From assembly GCF_006345805.1 (NCBI RefSeq), contig NC_043013.1:3534001-3598000 (forward strand): a DNA stretch of 64,000 nucleotides. The letters are read 5' to 3'. Position numbers and translations under genes: made by a program. Source of the stretch: Octopus sinensis (lineage: Eukaryota). Of the stretch, positions 9,837 to 50,421 are shown in pieces. How positions within the stretch are numbered: position 1 is the first letter of the stretch; the number at the start of each line of letters is the position of its first letter. Below the pieces are notes generated by a model. That model did not search any database, was not told the DNA's origin, and worked only from the letters and a program-made list of their open reading frames with translations.

Positions 9837-9936
9837 NNNNNNNNNNNNNNNNNNNNNNNNNNNNNNNNNNNNNNNNNNNNNNNNNNNNNNNNNNNNNNNN
9901 NNNNNNNNNNNNNNNNNNNNNNNNNNNNNNNNNNNN
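9837..9936. other. Assembly gap (100 N)
   Basis: Run of n. Confidence 1.
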
Positions 9937-27848: not shown

Positions 27849-30800
27849 CTGAACCTAATGTCTCAGCTTGGTACTTACGTTCCTAGGCACCAATTAGTTG
27901 CAGCTATTGGTAGGTCATGTAAATCGTTGGGCTCCAGAATACACCTTTCACAGACGATATGACGCAGAGGAATGAGTGAAAATATATGTAAAGCCCTCCG
28001 CCTGGTAACTGCAACAGAATCTGGGTAAGCTTCTTGATCAACGGTCGAGCAGGATAACGATTTGATGGTCTCGGCGCTAGAGATGGCGGGGATTTACCTC
28101 CCCGCTAGCGATATAAACAAGGGTGCACTTTACACCAAAAGCTAATATGAGAGTTCCTCTCGTCGCATCTACTGCAGTAAAGTTTGTTCTGACAACGGGA
28201 TAAACATAGCCTTCCAGTACGTTTCTAAACAGATTAATTACTAGACTTAATGGTTTTAAATCTTCAATGCAATTTGTAGGACAATCATGAGTCCTACGCT
28301 ACGAGACTGGAAACCAAGCAACGTGTTCTCAACAACCTGCAATACGAAAATTTCCATAATCCAAGCAGTTATGGAAATTCCGAGGTTCGAGACTAATCTA
28401 CGGATTACACGCAATTCTAGCTTTTCCAGTATTCCTGACCACTGTATTTGCTATAATATAATGGTGATGTCTATTCTGCTTCAAAATGTTTTAAGGAATA
28501 ATCTATAATACAACAGTGAGGTAGAATCTAAAAAATGATACTTTGGAAGAAATTTCTACGTCTCAAGATGCCACCTGTTTCCCCTATCGCAGTAAGGAGC
28601 ATGCTGTGATTCAATGGCATCAAGAGCGCTCCGGGTTGGAAAAATGCACTTTACTTGAAAGACATTTCTCAGCACTTTCACGTGTTAGTTGGTTCAGCGA
28701 CATACTCATCTTGATCTTTGCTTCAACATCCACAGAATAGTGACCAGGTATCTTTAGAATTGATAATCCCACTTTGGATAAAATGGTTTGTTGTTCACTT
28801 CGTTATAGGTGCGTGGTTTTATTTTACTAGTATAACATGCTCACGCTAGGAAACGCGGTACACAAAACCAAACCCATTTTAATATCAGTAAACTGGAGTT
28901 TTATGTAAGCTAGTTGAGAATATAGGAAATGACGAATGGTCGCGGCATTTTCTGACATCTTTCCCATTAAGCCAATTTCACGTTCACTTCCAGACTCGCT
29001 GACTAGTTTTAAAAATCAATGCAAAACTAGTTTGCTGCTAGAGTAGCCTCCCCTGATTTGAATGCGAACGAATACAAGATTATACCAATACATTTTTGAA
29101 ATCGTTAAAATTTCGTGCAAATGCCTAACTCTAAATCAGTTCATTGATTTCACAATTTAACCGACAAATTGTAAACATGAAGATTTTTTCATTTTCTTGC
29201 GTAATTTGGGAAAACCCAGTCCTAAACCTTTAACGATCAAATCAACGAAATGTGCACAATATTCCTTAAAATCTTGGGGGGGGGGATATCAACCATCTCC
29301 AATAGAACAGCGATGGCTTCAGTTTTATTGGAGCTGATTGAATTCTATTATGTCGTGTTATTTAAACCTATCGTTAACATCGCGAAATTTGTCCAGGCCC
29401 AAACTGCGATCCCTCAAGAGCAAATCGCCTTTTAGGCCTCAGCTCCTAGCAGCTATCTTTTTTTTTTTTCTTTTCTTTTTACTACCAAATCATTTGCTAT
29501 CTCGAGTTCGTATTTCAGGACTGCCATTTATAAAAGCCATCCCTACACATGTGACGCAAGTTACTAAAGATTTCGCGCGATAACTCAAAACACTTCAATG
29601 TCGAGCTGGGAAATTTAGTGAAAAGGCTTTGTAGTGTTTGTAGGACGGAGCAGCTAGTTAAAGGGGAATAAACCATGGTGGAGACGAGTTATCTACCGTA
29701 GACAGCCTTTTACAATATTATACCTTTAAAGGAATTACAACAGTGGCTTTTCAGAGAGATGCGAAACTATTTTGAAGTTGTAATTCAGGCACTCATGACC
29801 ACACATTCACGAAAAAGTAACAAGAACACAAGTTTTTTATGAGGTAATTTATTTTGAAAAATTACCACCGAGTATACTACAAAATTTAGCCAAACTTCAA
29901 CTCACCATGGTTACTTTTTACACTTATGTGCTATTATTTCTTAATGGCATTTTGGTGCCTTGTTTAGTACTTCAGAAATTAAGTTTTAAATTTTCTCTAG
30001 TATGATTTATTAATGTTCCCCGTCAATTTTTTTTTTGCTCTCTCTCTCTTACTGCAAAAAAATTAAACGTCATTTATTTAAAATATGACACGTCCATTTT
30101 CTCCCGCTTTCTCCACCAAAAGATTCCAGGAGATGTTTTGAGTTGAAAACTCCCCCCACCACATGGATACTCACCTTGTACAACTTACCAATAAGCAATG
30201 CATCATCAGCCAAGTGACTGGCATTTCTTAACGCTTAAATGGCTTTCACCTTGTAAAAGTTGAGATAAGGATTAAGTTTTGATCGGTCTCATTTAAAATG
30301 CTTGTTGCTATGGTTATTAGTTATTCTTATGCAGAGGACCAATTAGGGTCTGTAAACCCCTGTGAAGAGTGCTCCTGAGTGATAAACAAGCGAAAACGAA
30401 GTGCATGCACCAACAGCAAATTTGACTTGGAGCCTTGTTAGTGTCTTAACATTGGGATCTTTAGAGTACTTTAGAAGCAGTGGCCAATACAGATTAGCCT
30501 GTAAATTCTTACATGCAATCGAGATTTTATCAGCGATTATGTGGTCTACTAAAAAGCAATAAATAATAGGTGGCTTGACCCAAACCCCGTCATGCTGAAA
30601 TTATGTGCAAGCAAAGCGAAACTTCTTAGTTTCCAGTCCAACACAGGTGCTCGTGTTCTTCTCTAGTTGCTCCAAGCACTAATCTATTGGATGCAAAGCA
30701 AACCTACCTGAATTTTGTGTGTAATAAGGAAACAGGAAAATTAAAAACATGCAAGGAAATTTTGAAATACAAACCTTATTCTGAGAAACACAGCTTGTGA

Positions 30801-33143
30801 GGTTACGTAACTGCCTGCAAACGTCTCCAACACTGACAATGGAAAAACTCTACAAGCATAGACTTCCTCCATCTGGCTTTCAAATTTTCCACATTTACAT
30901 GTAAGGAGCAACTTGTTCTGAACAAAGCTAAGATGAAACACTGCTACAAAATCAGCTTTCCTAGTCCTTTAAACATAACTGAACAGTCAATAGCTGTTAA
31001 TATCAATCAATTATTCAGTTGCTTTGTTAGCTCTATGCTATACTTCATATAGTGATCAGCTTATTTTGTATCAAATTAATTACATCTAATTAATAGAAAG
31101 GAAACTTTCTTTTACGATTAGAATCACCTTCTCTACTTCATTAGTTACTCTCTTTTATAATTGTTGTCAATTCTAAAATTAAGACTTGCTGTTGAACTTC
31201 CTGGTTTCTGTCCTGGCAGTGTTGAAACAACATAAAATAAAATATACAACCCAAATCATTAGTACAATAAATGTCTAGTGCTTTGGGGAGAGCAGAAAGA
31301 TCAATGGCAACTTTTCCAAGGCCAATGACCAAAGTGACTTACCTGTGAGTGTGTTTACCTGACATATCAATGGAAGAGGAATTGGCAAAAGATAATATCA
31401 ATAAAAGCTTATGCTTACTAAATCCCCATTATCCAAGAGTTACTTTTCAACTGCAAACTTACTAAGCTAAAAGGGACCATAGTGGCAATTTAATTTAGTA
31501 CTAAATTGATTCAAATTTAATAAAGCAACTTAACATTTGTTATATTTGCACACATAAAACACAATGACTTCATCTTCACTCAAACAAAACTTGTAATAGT
31601 GTTTAAAAAGATCTAGTAGTTAAGTCATTGACTAACACTTATTCCACAAACAGTTACAAGCCAGATATTCTACACAGAACCACCTTCTGCTTTCACCTGA
31701 GTGAACGCCATGTAAAAACTAGTTTCATTTGTCAGCCACTTCACCAAACTCACAATTCATACTTTGCGGAGTGCTGCCATATGCCATGGTAGAAAAGGGA
31801 AAAGTTAGGTAGCCTCAGGTTACCCTAACAAATCCTAACTCAGGTATAGGATTCCTGCTGTGACAAATTTTAAATATTAAGATTTATAAACTTTTGGCTG
31901 CATTGACTGGCACAAGATAGCTACATATGCATATTCAGAGTGGAGCAAGTATTTTTTTTTTTTTTTACTGGTGATACTCTTTCAAATGAAAATATTTAAC
32001 ACTAAGAAACTCATCTGAACCTTAGCTATATGTGTGTGTGTGTGTGTGTGCATGTGTATATAAGTTGTGCAAGTAAAACTCAGTACAACCTTTCTCGTGA
32101 ATTGAGATATCACATTAGGTTAGTCTTACCTCTATGAAGTTCATTACAAACTTTACATTAGCTTATAAATTCAACAGTTCCTACACATTATATTGGGGGT
32201 ACTTCTATATTAGGGTTTAACATAAAATTGATTAACACCCTAATATCATAAATTCAGTACATAGATATTTTCAGAGTATAGTCAAGTAAGTGGTTAAACT
32301 TGCATAAGCATTTATCTTATACATTAATCATTCTGCTATTGCATGTATTTTGCTTTGATATTTCATTTGCTGTGGAGTCAGTGGCAACACACGCATAACC
32401 AATGACAATTACTGGATTCTGTAGAACTAAGGAACCAATAATAATCACAGAAATTTCTAATTCATTATAAATTGACTTACTTTATATAAATCCATATTTA
32501 CTTTATATAAATCCTACTCTATTCAGCAGAACTAAAATTTATGCAAATTTCACAATAACCAAGTGTGTTACATAAACTTATGTGTGTGTGTCGTATGTAA
32601 GTAATTTAAATCCATCCCAGTTTCACTTCGGTGGATATAAAACTGACTTAAATACGGTGCAGGGGATAGACACACAAACCTATTATATACACACACTTAT
32701 TTCTTAAGGAACTGATAAAAAGGACCATATATAATGGTAATCATTCTAGTAAAAAATCAAACTGAATAATTTAATCCTTATACCACTATGATCTCTTGGG
32801 TTAATGACAGAAGTTAGCAATAAGGGAAGATTTTTTACAGTTTGATCGCAAAGTGGGAGGGAGGAAAATGTTAATGATGAAATCTAGCAATTCCAAAGTA
32901 ATAAATAGAATAAGGGTTTGGCACAGCTATTGAATACAGTAAGTACTATACATACTTTCATTTTAGGGTTTTGTTTTTCTGTTTTGTTTTCCTCGTCCAA
33001 GCCAACTTCGACACCAGACACATTGTGCCTCCATCTTGACCTGCTCTCCTCCATTCGTCCGTCAGGCAAACACATTACAGTAACAGCTATACAAACTAGC
33101 AAATGATCTCACACACAACAACAGTGCAAGCATACACGTCATA

Positions 33144-33149
33144 TTTATT
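33144..33149 (-). terminator. Candidate proximal poly(A) signal of TDP-43
   Basis: AATAAA on the minus strand about 490 nt after the stop, followed by GU-rich GTGTATGCTTGCACTGTTGTTGTGTGTG. Confidence 0.5.
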
Positions 33150-33638
33150 TCCTTATACAAACGGCATTCAACCATACTGCAGACATTAAGAGACACACCC
33201 TAAGACAGCCATTCCGTGTTCATCAGCATCAGATAATCCGGTGAATCTATCTCATCAAGTCTGTCGAATACACTCAATGTCATGCACTCAGCCAAATGAC
33301 GCTGGATATACGATGAGTAGTGTTCCCACTTGTCACTGCTGCTATAATGATCCACAGCAGAAACCACACATTAAATGGAGCCAATGAAGAGAAAATAATA
33401 ATCATAATGGGGTGGAAGGAACTCTCACATCTAACACTTGCAGCACTAAGCACAGGAGTTGGAACTTGGAGATTTAGGGTTGGTTGCTTTTTTTTTTTTT
33501 TGATTTTTTTTTTGCTTTTTTCACTTTTCTGGTTGGGAGTGGGAGGGGCTTTCTTTAAAAATAAGTTTATCTGGAACATCATGATTAAATACTGAAATCT
33601 GCATACCTCCAACACTTCATTTTAAAACAAATTGTCCT

Positions 33639-34298
33639 TCAGTTCCAACCACCACCTGGTTTGCTATGCTGACCCCAGCCACCTGCCTGTGCTGAGCCGC
33701 TGTCTGAGGTCTGGCCACCCCAACCAAGGAAGCTATTGTTATTAGCACCTTGACCACTAGTATTAAAACTACTTAAGCTCTGATTGCTGTTTTGGTTTGA
33801 GGTATCACCTGCTCCTTGGCCAAGCCCTAAAGGGCCCCATCCACCTTGGCTACTAAGCATGGCCTGAGCAGCAGCCAGCATTGCAGGGTTCAACTGGAAA
33901 GCACTCAAGTTCAATCCCCCCATATTATTCATATTACTGCCCATATTTTGACCTCCACGTTGGTTTCCCTGTCCCCAACCACCTTGACCATATCCCTGGT
34001 TATACGGAGGCTGAACTTGATTTTGACCTTTCTTATCTCCAAACTTGTCGTAGTTTTTTGGGACTGCGCTACTGATATGGACACTGATTCCCTTAACAAT
34101 ATGGTCCTCCCCACAAAGACTTTGAGCGACTTCTGGATTAGAGAAAGTTACAAATGCAAAAGCTCGAAAAGGCTTGGGAATGAAAACATCAATGACCTCT
34201 CCAAATTTGCCAAAGTGGCTACGCAGATCATCGGCGGTCATATCTTCAGTGCATCGACCAATGAAAACTTTGCGATTCATCGTTTGTTGACCTCCATC
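33639..34298 (-). CDS. TARDBP: TDP-43 coding exon 4 (RRM2 and Gly/Gln/Asn-rich low-complexity C-terminus, stop TGA)
   Basis: Acceptor tttcag|GAT. Translates DGGQQTMNRKVFIGRC...RAFAFVTF...AQSLCGED...PAMLAAAQAMLSSQGGWG...GGGWN*. Agrees with ORF-track entry 33639..34280. Confidence 0.97.
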   Translation of the reverse strand, partial: DGGQQTMNRKVFIGRCTEDMTADDLRSHFGKFGEVIDVFIPKPFRAFAFVTFSNPEVAQSLCGEDHIVKGISVHISSAVPKNYDKFGDKKGQNQVQPPYNQGYGQGGWGQGNQRGGQNMGSNMNNMGGLNLSAFQLNPAMLAAAQAMLSSQGGWGPLGLGQGAGDTSNQNSNQSLSSFNTSGQGANNNSFLGWGGQTSDSGSAQAGGWGQHSKPGGGWN

Positions 34299-34414
34299 CT
34301 GAAATAGAGAAGAAAGGAATCTGTAATAAATTTACATACTTTTTATCTCATGTAAACTAATGGATATTTATGAAATAACAGTTCAAATAGCATTTTGTGA
34401 GATTATGAAAATAC

Positions 34415-34555
34415 CTTTGAATTTGGGATTCTGACATCACACCATCTTCCATCAATCATGTGCCGTTGGGAAATGCATTTCAACTGAGCCTCATAATCAA
34501 CAAAACGAACAAAGCCAAATCCCTTGGACTGGCCACTTTTAAGGTCTTTCTTCAC
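34415..34555 (-). CDS. TARDBP: TDP-43 coding exon 3 (second half of RRM1)
   Basis: Acceptor tgcag|GTG. Translates [47 protein letters not shown], with RNP1 KGFGFVRF. Donor AAG|gtatt at 34414; 141 nt, phase 0. Confidence 0.97.
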
Positions 34556-43622: not shown

Positions 43623-43992
43623 AGCAAATAATGATAGTTAAATTTCATTTTACATTGAAGTAGCTATGTTTAATAACATTTTTAGACTTAATCTGCAGAC
43701 AATTTAAGATTAACTGTATCTTGGGACTCTTTAGCAGAGTTCACTTTGTTACAAGTATTTAGGCCAGGTTTCTAGAGTGATGCTAAATTTTGCTCTTCCC
43801 CTTCCAACTAGACCTTAAAAAGCCTGCATTTATGAAAACAACAATTCAATACAAGTGAGAGACAATCTCTAGTTTTAAAGTTCATTAAAAAACAGATATA
43901 TTTACCGAGTTGTCTTTCACAAGTTTCCCCATGGTTTATCTCAATGCTTGTAAGAGCCACTAAAAAATAGGATGGTCACAGTGGAAATGTTT

Positions 43993-50018: not shown

Positions 50019-50118
50019 CCTGAAGAGTTTAAGCAACACAAATATATATATATATATATATATCAAGTACTGAAGAAATTTAAGTTTAGGGGGTCTTTTT
50101 TTTGGCTATTCTTTTTAC

Positions 50119-50235
50119 CTCGGGATGTCGTTAGTTGCGATCAAAAAAGATAGAGAAACCAACGAAGACGGTCGCACGAGTGGAAATATGGCGGAATGCT
50201 CTTCAACGATTCTCCTGGTCTCGCGCTACGCTGAC
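50119..50235 (-). other. TARDBP: Probable non-coding 5'UTR exon of TDP-43
   Basis: Donor GAG|gtaaaa at 50118 gives a 99-nt intron to the acceptor at 50020. A pyrimidine-rich acceptor ttttttcttttgaaatcag| precedes 50235. CpG-rich; contains CCGCCATATTT. Confidence 0.6.
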
Positions 50236-50421
50236 CTGATTTCAAAAGAAAAAATTAAATTTTCACACACATAATTATCTTACGTATACAAAATTACTTT
50301 TAAATAATCAAAACTTAACGATTAAATATATTTAAATGTAAAAACTTGACGTAATAATTATATTTACCGAAGCTGCGAGAGAAACGACGCGTTTTGATTG
50401 GTTGATTTTTCGAAATCCCGC
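50184..50421 (-). promoter_or_regulatory. Putative TDP-43 core promoter / first-exon region
   Basis: YY1-type CCGCCATNTT at 50194-50184; CCAAT at 50401-50397; CHR-like TTCGAA at 50409-50414; E2F-like GCGGGA at 50421-50416; donor TCG|gtaaat at 50367; locally CpG-rich. Confidence 0.5.

What the first reader, a model, noticed from the sequence alone, without database searches (positions are those of the whole stretch)
32130..33610. Predicted 3'UTR intron that would excise the proximal poly(A) signal: a cephalopod parallel of vertebrate TARDBP autoregulation
Seen: donor GAG|GTATGC at 33606, only 32 nt after the TGA; a strong acceptor ttattattggttccttagttctacag| at 32419, giving a 1188-nt intron; AATAAA plus a GU-rich downstream element (33149-33100) inside that intron; and a following 289-nt exon ending in GAG|GTAAGA (32129). 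Established: human TDP-43 limits its own level by binding its 3'UTR, suppressing the proximal poly(A) site and promoting splicing of a roughly 1-kb 3'UTR intron that contains it. Inference: the same logic may operate here. The first junction alone is under 50 nt from the stop (NMD-immune), whereas the downstream junctions (32129, 31342, 30188/30174) would make NMD targets, giving a graded switch. I am not aware of such a circuit being described in molluscs, but cannot check the literature.
Basis: partly seen in the sequence, partly recalled or inferred. Interest (0 to 1): 0.8.

Follow-up and report, generated by a model that had tools for sequence, protein, structure and literature searches.

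The report
Octopus TDP-43 gene 3' end
This is the tail of the octopus TDP-43 gene: its first poly(A) site is real, used and extremely conserved, but the intron predicted to cut that site out has no support, while better-conserved splice-donor signals further downstream hint at a related, still untested, self-regulation switch.

Summary
The gene is TARDBP (TDP-43) on the minus strand; its 401-aa product is identical to Octopus sinensis XP_029646682.1. The proximal AATAAA (33149-33144) is a real poly(A) site: a related octopod's cDNA carries a poly(A) tail 17 nt after it (about 33127).

The 1188-nt intron (33606-32419) is not supported:
- All five cDNA contigs from species with an intact donor run unspliced through it, although their coding introns are removed.
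- Two contigs read past the poly(A) site and still keep the "intron".
- The donor is mutated in one octopod lineage.
- The acceptor and the 289-nt "exon" lie in the only stretch with no similarity to Argonauta or a third lineage.
- An equally good donor/acceptor pair arises by chance in about 1 of 5 placements.

What is conserved across three octopod lineages is:
- UG-rich blocks flanking the proximal site.
- Two tandem consensus 5' splice-site modules (31358/31342 and 30188/30174).

A distal AATAAA (29853) is conserved between Octopus and Argonauta only; it was not found in the third lineage.

Best reading: alternative polyadenylation, with read-through RNAs made unproductive by the downstream donor modules. 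This resembles vertebrate TARDBP feedback, but TDP-43 dependence is untested. Interest is moderate.

The parts
33639..34298 (-). Last coding exon of TARDBP (RRM2 plus Gly/Asn/Gln-rich C-terminus); stop TGA at 33641-33639
   Evidence: Translation; spliced CDS of 401 aa identical to P0236, O. sinensis XP_029646682.1; Pfam TDP-43_N, RRM_1 x2, TDP-43_C
33601..33609 (-).
   Evidence: Sequence; PWM score 7.8. Present in O. bimaculoides, L014, L011, L001, L015, L018 and Argonauta; replaced by GAAATCTGC in the L002 species. Unspliced in 5/5 cDNA contigs from donor-intact species
33127..33638 (-). Proximal 3'UTR, 512 nt, unspliced in all assembled cDNAs; holds invariant blocks such as ATTATTTTCTCTTCATTGGCTCCA (33399-33376) and UG-rich blocks (GUUAGAUGUGAG, AAUGUGUGG, GGGUGUGUC)
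   Evidence: cDNA contigs L001, L011-L013 and L018 are colinear with the genome; five-lineage invariance
33144..33149 (-). Proximal poly(A) signal AATAAA, inside the invariant block CGTTTGTATAAGGAAATAA
   Evidence: used in the L001 cDNA
33127..33127 (-). Inferred cleavage/polyadenylation site, 17 nt after the AATAAA
   Evidence: L001 ends ...GTGTATGCTTG followed by more than 40 A; its alignment to the window stops at 33127
33000..33126 (-). Post-cleavage conserved block, GU/UG-rich (CACUGUUGUUGUGUGUGAG, UAGUUUGUAUA, AUGUGUUUGCCUGAC); absent from the short mRNA yet 71% invariant across five octopod lineages
   Evidence: 100% identical between O. sinensis and O. bimaculoides over 33400-33001
32419..32444 (-).
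   Evidence: Sequence; PWM 5.1. Kept in O. bimaculoides. In L014 a 22-nt deletion removes the AG, the last 20 nt before it and the first 2 nt after it. No similarity in Argonauta or L015
32130..32418 (-).
   Evidence: 32400-32201 is the least conserved 200-nt stretch inside the conserved block between O. sinensis and O. bimaculoides (83.5%); no similarity in Argonauta or L015; no transcript covers it
32121..32132 (-). Donor-like GAG|GTAAGA (G of GT = 32129)
   Evidence: Sequence; PWM 9.9; GT kept in O. bimaculoides and L014 only
31343..31780 (-). Conserved non-coding block (possible 3'UTR exon). Conservation starts at a pyrimidine tract and ends exactly at a consensus donor
   Evidence: 71% identity to Argonauta over 472 nt; the last 71 nt are 87% identical to L015; no minus-strand ORF of 40 aa or more
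31337..31361 (-). Tandem 5' splice-site module 1: CAG|GTAAAC (31358) and CAG|GTAAGT (31342)
   Evidence: Part of a run of about 44 nt that is invariant except for two adjacent positions in Octopus, O. bimaculoides, Argonauta and L015; similarity stops after GTAAGT; PWM 12.6
30702..30710 (-). CAG|GTAGGT 5'ss-like motif (GTAAGT in Argonauta) followed by conserved UUUGCUUUGCAUCC
30169..30191 (-). Tandem 5' splice-site module 2: TTG|GTAAGT (30188) and AAG|GTGAGT (30174)
   Evidence: Conserved in O. bimaculoides, Argonauta and L015 while the flanks diverge; PWM 8.3 and 12.2
29800..29853 (-). Predicted distal poly(A) signal AATAAA (29853-29848) plus a GU-rich downstream element
   Evidence: Conserved in Argonauta but not found in the L015 lineage by pattern or blastn. 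O. sinensis / O. bimaculoides identity falls from about 95% to about 65% some 250 nt further on. Usage not shown

Best explanation
This is the 3' end of the octopus TDP-43 gene.

Shown:
- The main mRNA ends at a deeply conserved proximal poly(A) site (AATAAA 33149-33144, cleavage about 33127), giving an unspliced 512-nt 3'UTR.
- Some RNA reads through that site.
- The next 3.3 kb is unusually conserved.
- That stretch carries two tandem consensus 5' splice-site modules (31358/31342 and 30188/30174), conserved in three octopod lineages. It also carries a further 5'ss-like site (30707) and a distal poly(A) signal (29853), both conserved in Argonauta.

Inferred:
- TDP-43 binds the conserved UG-rich blocks on both sides of the proximal cleavage site and lowers its use.
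- Read-through RNAs are then made unproductive by the downstream donor modules. This could happen through 3'UTR splicing far from the stop codon followed by NMD, or through U1-snRNP-dependent nuclear retention or decay, or through suppression of nearby poly(A) sites.
- The result would be negative feedback that works like vertebrate TARDBP autoregulation.

At most it is a minor cryptic splice.
For: - Gene identity.
- Proximal site in use: poly(A)-tailed cDNA L001.
- No splicing at 33606: L001, L018, L011, L012 and L013 all have their coding introns removed but are colinear through the donor.
- Read-through: L011 continues unspliced to 32712. L002 continues at least 270 nt past the site and is colinear with the genome of a related species.
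- Conservation: 33400-33001 is 100% identical between O. sinensis and O. bimaculoides. 33600-29600 is mostly 92-98% identical, against 81-89% for the flanking non-coding DNA.
- Across five lineages, 71% of the positions just after the cleavage site are invariant, and the invariant blocks there are UG-rich.
- The tandem 5'ss modules occur in the same order in Octopus, Argonauta and L015, with sharp conservation boundaries.
- Two of the only three sites scoring 12 or more in 128 kb of both strands lie in this region. The chance of four or more donors scoring 10 or more in 3.9 kb is 0.024.
- The distal AATAAA and its GU-rich element are conserved in Argonauta.
- No other protein-coding gene is called within 10 kb downstream in O. 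bimaculoides or Argonauta.
- The human mechanism was checked in PMC3950720 and PMC4937342.
Against: - No transcript was obtained that covers 32712-29800, so it is not shown that the conserved modules belong to TARDBP RNA or are ever spliced.
- The read-through parts of L011 and L002 could be nascent pre-mRNA appended by the assembler.
- The distal AATAAA was not found in the L015 lineage, and its use is not shown in any species.
- UG-rich sequence just after a cleavage site is also what an ordinary CstF-binding downstream element looks like.
- TDP-43 binding and any dependence on its dose are untested.
- Assembled contigs show only dominant isoforms, so a rare regulated splice of 33606-32419 cannot be excluded.
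- The donor-like GAGGTATGC is retained in most octopods, including Argonauta.
Confidence: 0.45

Rival explanations
1. One reading: a normally silent 1188-nt intron (33606-32419) is spliced when TDP-43 is high. This removes the proximal poly(A) site, and further junctions downstream then trigger NMD.
For: - The motifs are present and similar in strength to the gene's real sites.
- 32419 is the first acceptor scoring 5 or more after the poly(A) site.
- The donor-like motif is retained in Argonauta, L015, L001, L018, L014 and O. bimaculoides.
- Human intron 7 is also silent in the steady state, so its absence from assembled contigs is not decisive.
Against: - 5/5 cDNA contigs from donor-intact species are unspliced, and the read-through contig L011 retains the interval.
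- The donor is destroyed by three clustered substitutions in the L002 species while its flanks stay conserved.
- The acceptor AG and the 20 nt before it are deleted in L014.
- The acceptor and the exon lie in the only unconserved stretch.
- The motif pair is expected by chance in 21% of placements.
Confidence: 0.1
2. A different intron excises the proximal site: the donor at 33606 pairs with an acceptor at the start of the conserved block (about 31768 in Octopus; CTTAG| about 10 nt earlier in Argonauta). That would make 31767-31343 a conserved 3'UTR exon ending at the CAG|GTAAGT donor.
For: - The donor motif is kept in most lineages.
- Conservation with Argonauta begins at a branch-point-like CTAAC plus a pyrimidine tract, and ends exactly at a perfect donor. 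That pattern is what a conserved exon looks like.
Against: - No transcript shows it.
- The AG is separated from the pyrimidine tract and scores poorly.
- Only the last 71 nt of the block are conserved in L015.
- The donor is absent in the L002 species.
Confidence: 0.12
3. There is no TDP-43 feedback here. The gene has a single constitutive poly(A) site. The conserved downstream islands belong to something else, such as an independent non-coding RNA on the same strand or transcriptional enhancers, and the 5'ss motifs are that RNA's real splice donors.
For: - No transcript links the islands to TARDBP.
- The only poly(A)-tailed cDNA ends at the proximal site, and none of the others is known to extend beyond 32712.
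- The region has no coding potential.
- Rfam finds nothing.
Against: - High conservation is continuous from the stop codon to about 29600 between the two Octopus species.
- About 130 nt just past the cleavage site is as invariant as the UTR itself.
- The contigs do read through.
- Conserved 3'UTRs coupled to unproductive processing are typical of autoregulated RNA-binding proteins (PMC4937342).
Confidence: 0.25

Closest known systems
Vertebrate TARDBP 3'UTR autoregulation (TDPBR, silent intron 7 containing pA1, distal pA2/pA4, introns 6 and 8): PMC3950720, PMC4937342
   Same: - An orthologous gene.
- A dominant proximal poly(A) site.
- A very conserved 3' region rich in UG motifs around that site.
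- RNA that extends past the proximal site.
- Splice signals and a further poly(A) signal downstream.
   Different: - No evidence for an intron that brackets the proximal site; the region is unspliced in all the cDNAs.
- The deeply conserved donors lie downstream of the proximal site.
- The proximal 3'UTR is only 512 nt.
- No sequence similarity to vertebrate 3'UTRs was tested or expected.
- TDP-43 binding and dose response are untested.
Unproductive splicing of SR and hnRNP genes tied to ultraconserved 3' elements (Lareau 2007 and Ni 2007, as cited in PMC4937342)
   Same: An RNA-binding-protein gene with non-coding 3' sequence as conserved as its coding sequence, and with conserved splice signals beyond the stop codon.
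   Different: Splicing of these signals is not demonstrated here. EJC-dependent NMD is not established in molluscs (own knowledge).
U1 snRNP-binding 5' splice-site motifs in terminal exons that inhibit nearby polyadenylation or cause nuclear retention or decay (own knowledge; not checked in the library)
   Same: Perfect, conserved 5'ss motifs in tandem pairs, with no obviously conserved partner acceptor. Module 2 lies 100-330 nt upstream of AATAAA hexamers.
   Different: This is purely a sequence resemblance. U1 binding, and whether the motifs sit in a terminal exon at all, are unknown.

Membership tests
TARDBP-type 3'UTR autoregulatory module (vertebrate model) | The gene encodes a TDP-43 orthologue | tested here: met
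   TDP-43_N, two RRMs and TDP-43_C; 53-55% identity to vertebrate TDP-43 over almost the full length
TARDBP-type 3'UTR autoregulatory module (vertebrate model) | A dominant proximal poly(A) site (pA1) in the 3'UTR | tested here: met
   Poly(A)-tailed cDNA L001 ends 17 nt after the conserved AATAAA. The signal is invariant in five lineages. Shown in a related octopod, not in the window's own species
TARDBP-type 3'UTR autoregulatory module (vertebrate model) | More distal poly(A) sites used by read-through RNA | tested here: inconclusive
   There are read-through contigs and a distal AATAAA plus GU-rich element conserved in Argonauta but not found in L015. No 3' end has been mapped there
TARDBP-type 3'UTR autoregulatory module (vertebrate model) | A normally silent 3'UTR intron with functional splice sites that contains pA1 | tested here: inconclusive
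   The motifs are present. Against that: 5/5 cDNAs are unspliced, the donor is lost in one lineage, the acceptor is not conserved, and the pair is at chance level. A rare event cannot be excluded without read-level data
TARDBP-type 3'UTR autoregulatory module (vertebrate model) | A TDP-43 binding region (UG-rich) around pA1 | tested here: inconclusive
   Conserved UG-rich blocks lie on both sides of the cleavage site. Binding cannot be tested here, and part of the signal is what an ordinary downstream element looks like
TARDBP-type 3'UTR autoregulatory module (vertebrate model) | Poly(A) choice or splicing responds to TDP-43 level, and the products are degraded or retained | not testable with these tools
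   Needs expression experiments
   The junction is in none of the 12 cDNA contigs that cover the donor position (L001-L008, L011-L013, L018). Five of them come from species with an intact GT
   The donor is absent in the L002 species. The acceptor AG is deleted in L014, and the region cannot be aligned in Argonauta or L015

The most novel reading that the evidence does not exclude
Octopods may keep TDP-43 in check with a 3'-end switch that works like the vertebrate one but is wired differently. TDP-43 would bind the invariant UG-rich blocks around the proximal poly(A) site and cause read-through. Two deeply conserved tandem 5' splice-site modules downstream would then mark the long RNA for splicing-dependent decay or for U1-dependent nuclear retention. 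That would make pA1-bypass feedback an ancient or convergent property of TARDBP across bilaterians.
Probability: 0.3. Interest if true: 0.65.

Novelty: new member of a known kind. Interest (0 to 1): 0.4.

Why it matters
TDP-43 dosage control is central to ALS/FTD biology, and its mechanism has been worked out only in mammals. My literature searches found no description of the endogenous mechanism in a mollusc.

The octopod TARDBP 3' end would offer an independent, comparative handle on which parts of the circuit are essential. It has a validated proximal site, invariant UG-rich blocks and conserved downstream donor modules. The candidate essentials are blocking of the poly(A) site, spliceosome or U1 recruitment, and NMD.

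It also matters as a caution. The eye-catching intron that would mirror human intron 7 is at chance level and is contradicted by the available cDNAs.

Tried and rejected
- Exact-product look-ups of window ORFs to reach O. sinensis/vulgaris transcript contigs (the 213-aa last-exon ORF; the 72-aa ORF just past pA1): nothing on record.
- Two metagenome-collection scans, one for the conserved module-1 sequence and one for the end of the CDS: no matches. That collection does not even hold L001.
- A last protein search with a composite of all 3'-region ORFs, meant to fish out any contig covering 33615-29500: no hits.
- Rfam scan of 29000-34500: nothing near any gathering score, so no known RNA family explains the conserved islands.
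- Cuttlefish (Acanthosepion pharaonis) locus L017: no nucleotide similarity to the octopus 3' region. Its gene models splice out of the Gly-rich coding region into downstream sequence, which resembles human intron 6. They are unverifiable predictions and I did not use them as evidence.
- A coding role for the downstream blocks: rejected. There is no minus-strand ORF of 40 aa or more, and the indels are not multiples of three.
- Pfam on two intronic ORFs that looked like a retroelement: no hit, so I dropped the idea.
Full report
**What is there**

The finding lies at the 3' end of a minus-strand gene.
- Its coding exons are 50018-49781, 34897-34731, 34555-34415 and 34298-33639.
- They encode a 401-aa protein with TDP-43_N, two RRMs and TDP-43_C.
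- The protein is identical to Octopus sinensis TDP-43 isoform X2 and differs by one residue from the O. bimaculoides protein.
- So the window comes from O. sinensis or O. vulgaris, and the gene is TARDBP.

**Checking the observation**

- TGA at 33641-33639.
- GAG|GTATGC, with the G of GT at 33606, 32 nt after the stop.
- A pyrimidine-rich stretch ending ...ttctacag| at 32419, which makes the interval 1188 nt.
- AATAAA at 33149-33144, followed by UGUUGUUGUGUGUGAG.
- GAG|GTAAGA at 32129, which closes a 289-nt segment.

I scored the splice motifs with an approximate splice-site weight matrix whose frequencies come from general knowledge.
- The donor scores 7.8, within the range of this gene's real donors (3.7-9.7).
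- The acceptor scores 5.1, against 4.4-12.8 for the real acceptors.
- Such donors occur about once per kb on either strand of this AT-rich window.
- A donor this good within 489 nt, followed by an acceptor this good within the next 1.5 kb, turns up in 21% of random placements.

The motifs are therefore real, but as a pair they carry no statistical weight.

**The proximal poly(A) site is real**

L001 is a metatranscriptome cDNA contig from a related octopod whose protein is 96% identical.
- Its coding introns have been removed.
- It runs colinear with the genome through the whole proximal 3'UTR.
- It ends in a long poly(A) tail right after ...AATAAATATGAAGTGTATGCTTG. That corresponds to window position 33127, 17 nt after the hexamer.

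**RNA evidence on the predicted intron**

I recovered cDNA contigs from several octopods: L001 and L018 (two metatranscriptomes), L011, L012 and L013 (three sequencing runs with the O. bimaculoides-type protein), and L002-L009 (one further species).
- All of them have the coding introns spliced out, including the 15-kb one.
- All 12 contigs that reach the donor position are colinear with the genome across it.
- Five of those (L001, L018, L011, L012, L013) come from species whose GAGGTATGC is intact. All five are unspliced.
- L011 continues unspliced past the poly(A) site to 32712, well inside the proposed intron.
- L002 also reads past the site, and its tail is colinear with the genome of a related species.

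Two caveats apply. Assemblies report the dominant path, so a rare regulated splice cannot be excluded. The read-through tails could also be nascent RNA appended by the assembler.

**Comparative evidence on the predicted intron**

- Donor. The donor-like motif sits in a conserved patch and is kept in O. bimaculoides, L014, L015, L001, L018 and Argonauta hians. In the L002 species three clustered substitutions turn it into GAAATCTGC, while the flanking sequence stays conserved.
- Acceptor. The acceptor is kept only in the very close O. bimaculoides. In another Octopus-like species (L014, 88% identical) a 22-nt deletion removes the AG and the last 20 nt before it. A CCAG just downstream remains.
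- Exon. Against Argonauta and the L015 lineage, similarity runs from the last exon to about 32970 and then vanishes until 31780.
- Even between O. sinensis and O. bimaculoides, 32400-32201 is the least conserved 200-nt stretch inside the conserved block, at 83.5%.

**What is conserved instead**

Between the two Octopus species, 33400-33001 is 100% identical. The stretch 33600-29600 is mostly 92-98% identical, against 81-89% for the surrounding non-coding DNA. Identity collapses near 29600.

Across five lineages the longest invariant blocks are:
- ATTATTTTCTCTTCATTGGCTCCA.
- CGTTTGTATAAGGAAATAA, which contains the poly(A) signal.
- GTGTATGCTTGCACTGTTGTTGTG, which spans the cleavage site.

The 127 nt after the cleavage site are 71% invariant, as high as any part of the UTR, even though the short mRNA lacks them. 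They are UG-rich.

Further downstream, Argonauta shares colinear islands at 31780-31324, 30790-30667 and 29884-29784. Within them:
- TCCTCTTCCATTGATATGTCAG|GTAAACACACTCACAG|GTAAGT is invariant apart from two adjacent positions in Octopus, Argonauta and L015. Similarity ends right after GTAAGT.
- G|GTAAGT...CAAG|GTGAGTA is likewise kept in all three lineages while its flanks diverge.
- CAG|GTAGGT at 30707 is GTAAGT in Argonauta.
- The AATAAA at 29853 and its GU-rich tail are conserved in Argonauta. They were not found in the L015 lineage.

Two of the only three sites in the whole window (both strands) that score 12 or more as donors lie here. No other protein-coding gene is called within 10 kb downstream in O. 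bimaculoides or Argonauta, and Rfam finds nothing.

**Most likely mechanism**

Shown: a dominant, conserved proximal poly(A) site gives an unspliced 512-nt 3'UTR; some RNA extends past it; and the conserved 3.3-kb extension carries tandem consensus 5' splice sites and a distal poly(A) signal.

Inferred: TDP-43 binds the UG-rich blocks around the proximal site and reduces cleavage there, as shown for the human gene (PMC3950720 and PMC4937342). Read-through RNAs then meet the conserved donor modules and become unproductive. That could happen by splicing far downstream of the stop codon, with NMD if molluscs have EJC-dependent NMD. It could also happen by U1-dependent retention or decay.

I put this at about 0.45. 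The rivals are:
- a different intron from 33606 to the start of the conserved block near 31768 (0.12);
- no feedback at all, with the downstream islands belonging to another transcript or to enhancers (0.25).

**Comparison with what is known**

The locus works like vertebrate TARDBP in having a major pA1, a conserved UG-rich neighbourhood, read-through and downstream processing signals. It fails, or leaves open, the defining feature of the vertebrate module, which is a silent intron that contains pA1. I therefore do not file it as a member of that module.

I found no paper describing TDP-43 autoregulation in a mollusc. For Drosophila I found only a hypothesis about the endogenous 3'UTR.

Its validity in molluscs is unknown (own knowledge).

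**Verdict**

Novelty: a probable new member of the known class of RNA-binding-protein genes with conserved regulatory 3' ends. Interest is moderate (0.4). Read-level RNA-seq or long reads would settle the question quickly.

Noticed in passing
window 31337-31361 and 30169-30191 (minus strand); L016 16757 and 17961; L015 13206 and 15171: Two tandem pairs of consensus 5' splice sites (CAG|GTAAAC..CAG|GTAAGT and G|GTAAGT..AAG|GTGAGT) are conserved in the same order downstream of the TARDBP proximal poly(A) site in Octopus, Argonauta and a third octopod lineage. Their flanks diverge, and no clearly conserved partner acceptor was found.
   Followed up: partly
window 50144-50248 (minus strand): The last 35 residues of the O. 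vulgaris model of the neighbouring TARDBP-like paralogue (P0124, CAI9735501.1) are a translation of this gene's first, 5'UTR, exon. That model leaves the paralogue's Gly-rich coding region at an internal donor and runs into TARDBP. It is either a conjoined read-through transcript or an annotation artefact.
   Followed up: partly
L016 1-1673 and 10001-14945; protein clusters: Octopods have two tandem TARDBP genes on the same strand, about 70% identical in protein, with the paralogue upstream. The cuttlefish also has two copies on one contig. The paralogue's coding exons are not inside this window.
   Followed up: partly
window 43906-43959 (minus strand): A 54-nt cassette exon (VALTSIEINHGETCERQL) with a strong acceptor (ttttttag|) and donor (G|GTAAAT) lies in the 15-kb first coding intron. 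It accounts for the annotated 419-aa isoform X1. It inserts 18 residues between the N-terminal domain and the NLS region.
   Followed up: partly
L017 23270-24090 (Acanthosepion pharaonis): The cuttlefish TARDBP gene models (P0018, P0089) splice from inside the Gly-rich coding region to an acceptor about 630 nt past the natural GGWN* stop. This is reminiscent of human intron 6. The basis of the models is unknown.
   Followed up: partly
window 33575-33592 and 33376-33399 (minus strand): GTATTTAATCATGATGTT and ATTATTTTCTCTTCATTGGCTCCA in the proximal 3'UTR are invariant across five octopod lineages. They are not UG-rich, so they are candidate binding sites for some other factor or a microRNA.
   Followed up: no
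window 9837-9936: A run of 100 N, which is an assembly gap.
   Followed up: no
window 50020-50110 (minus strand): A candidate short intron in the 5'UTR (cccgag|gtaaaa ... ttcag|gATG) lies just before the start codon. In the cDNA contigs L011-L013 the window alignment runs straight across it, at 79-85% identity, so it appears to be retained.
   Followed up: no
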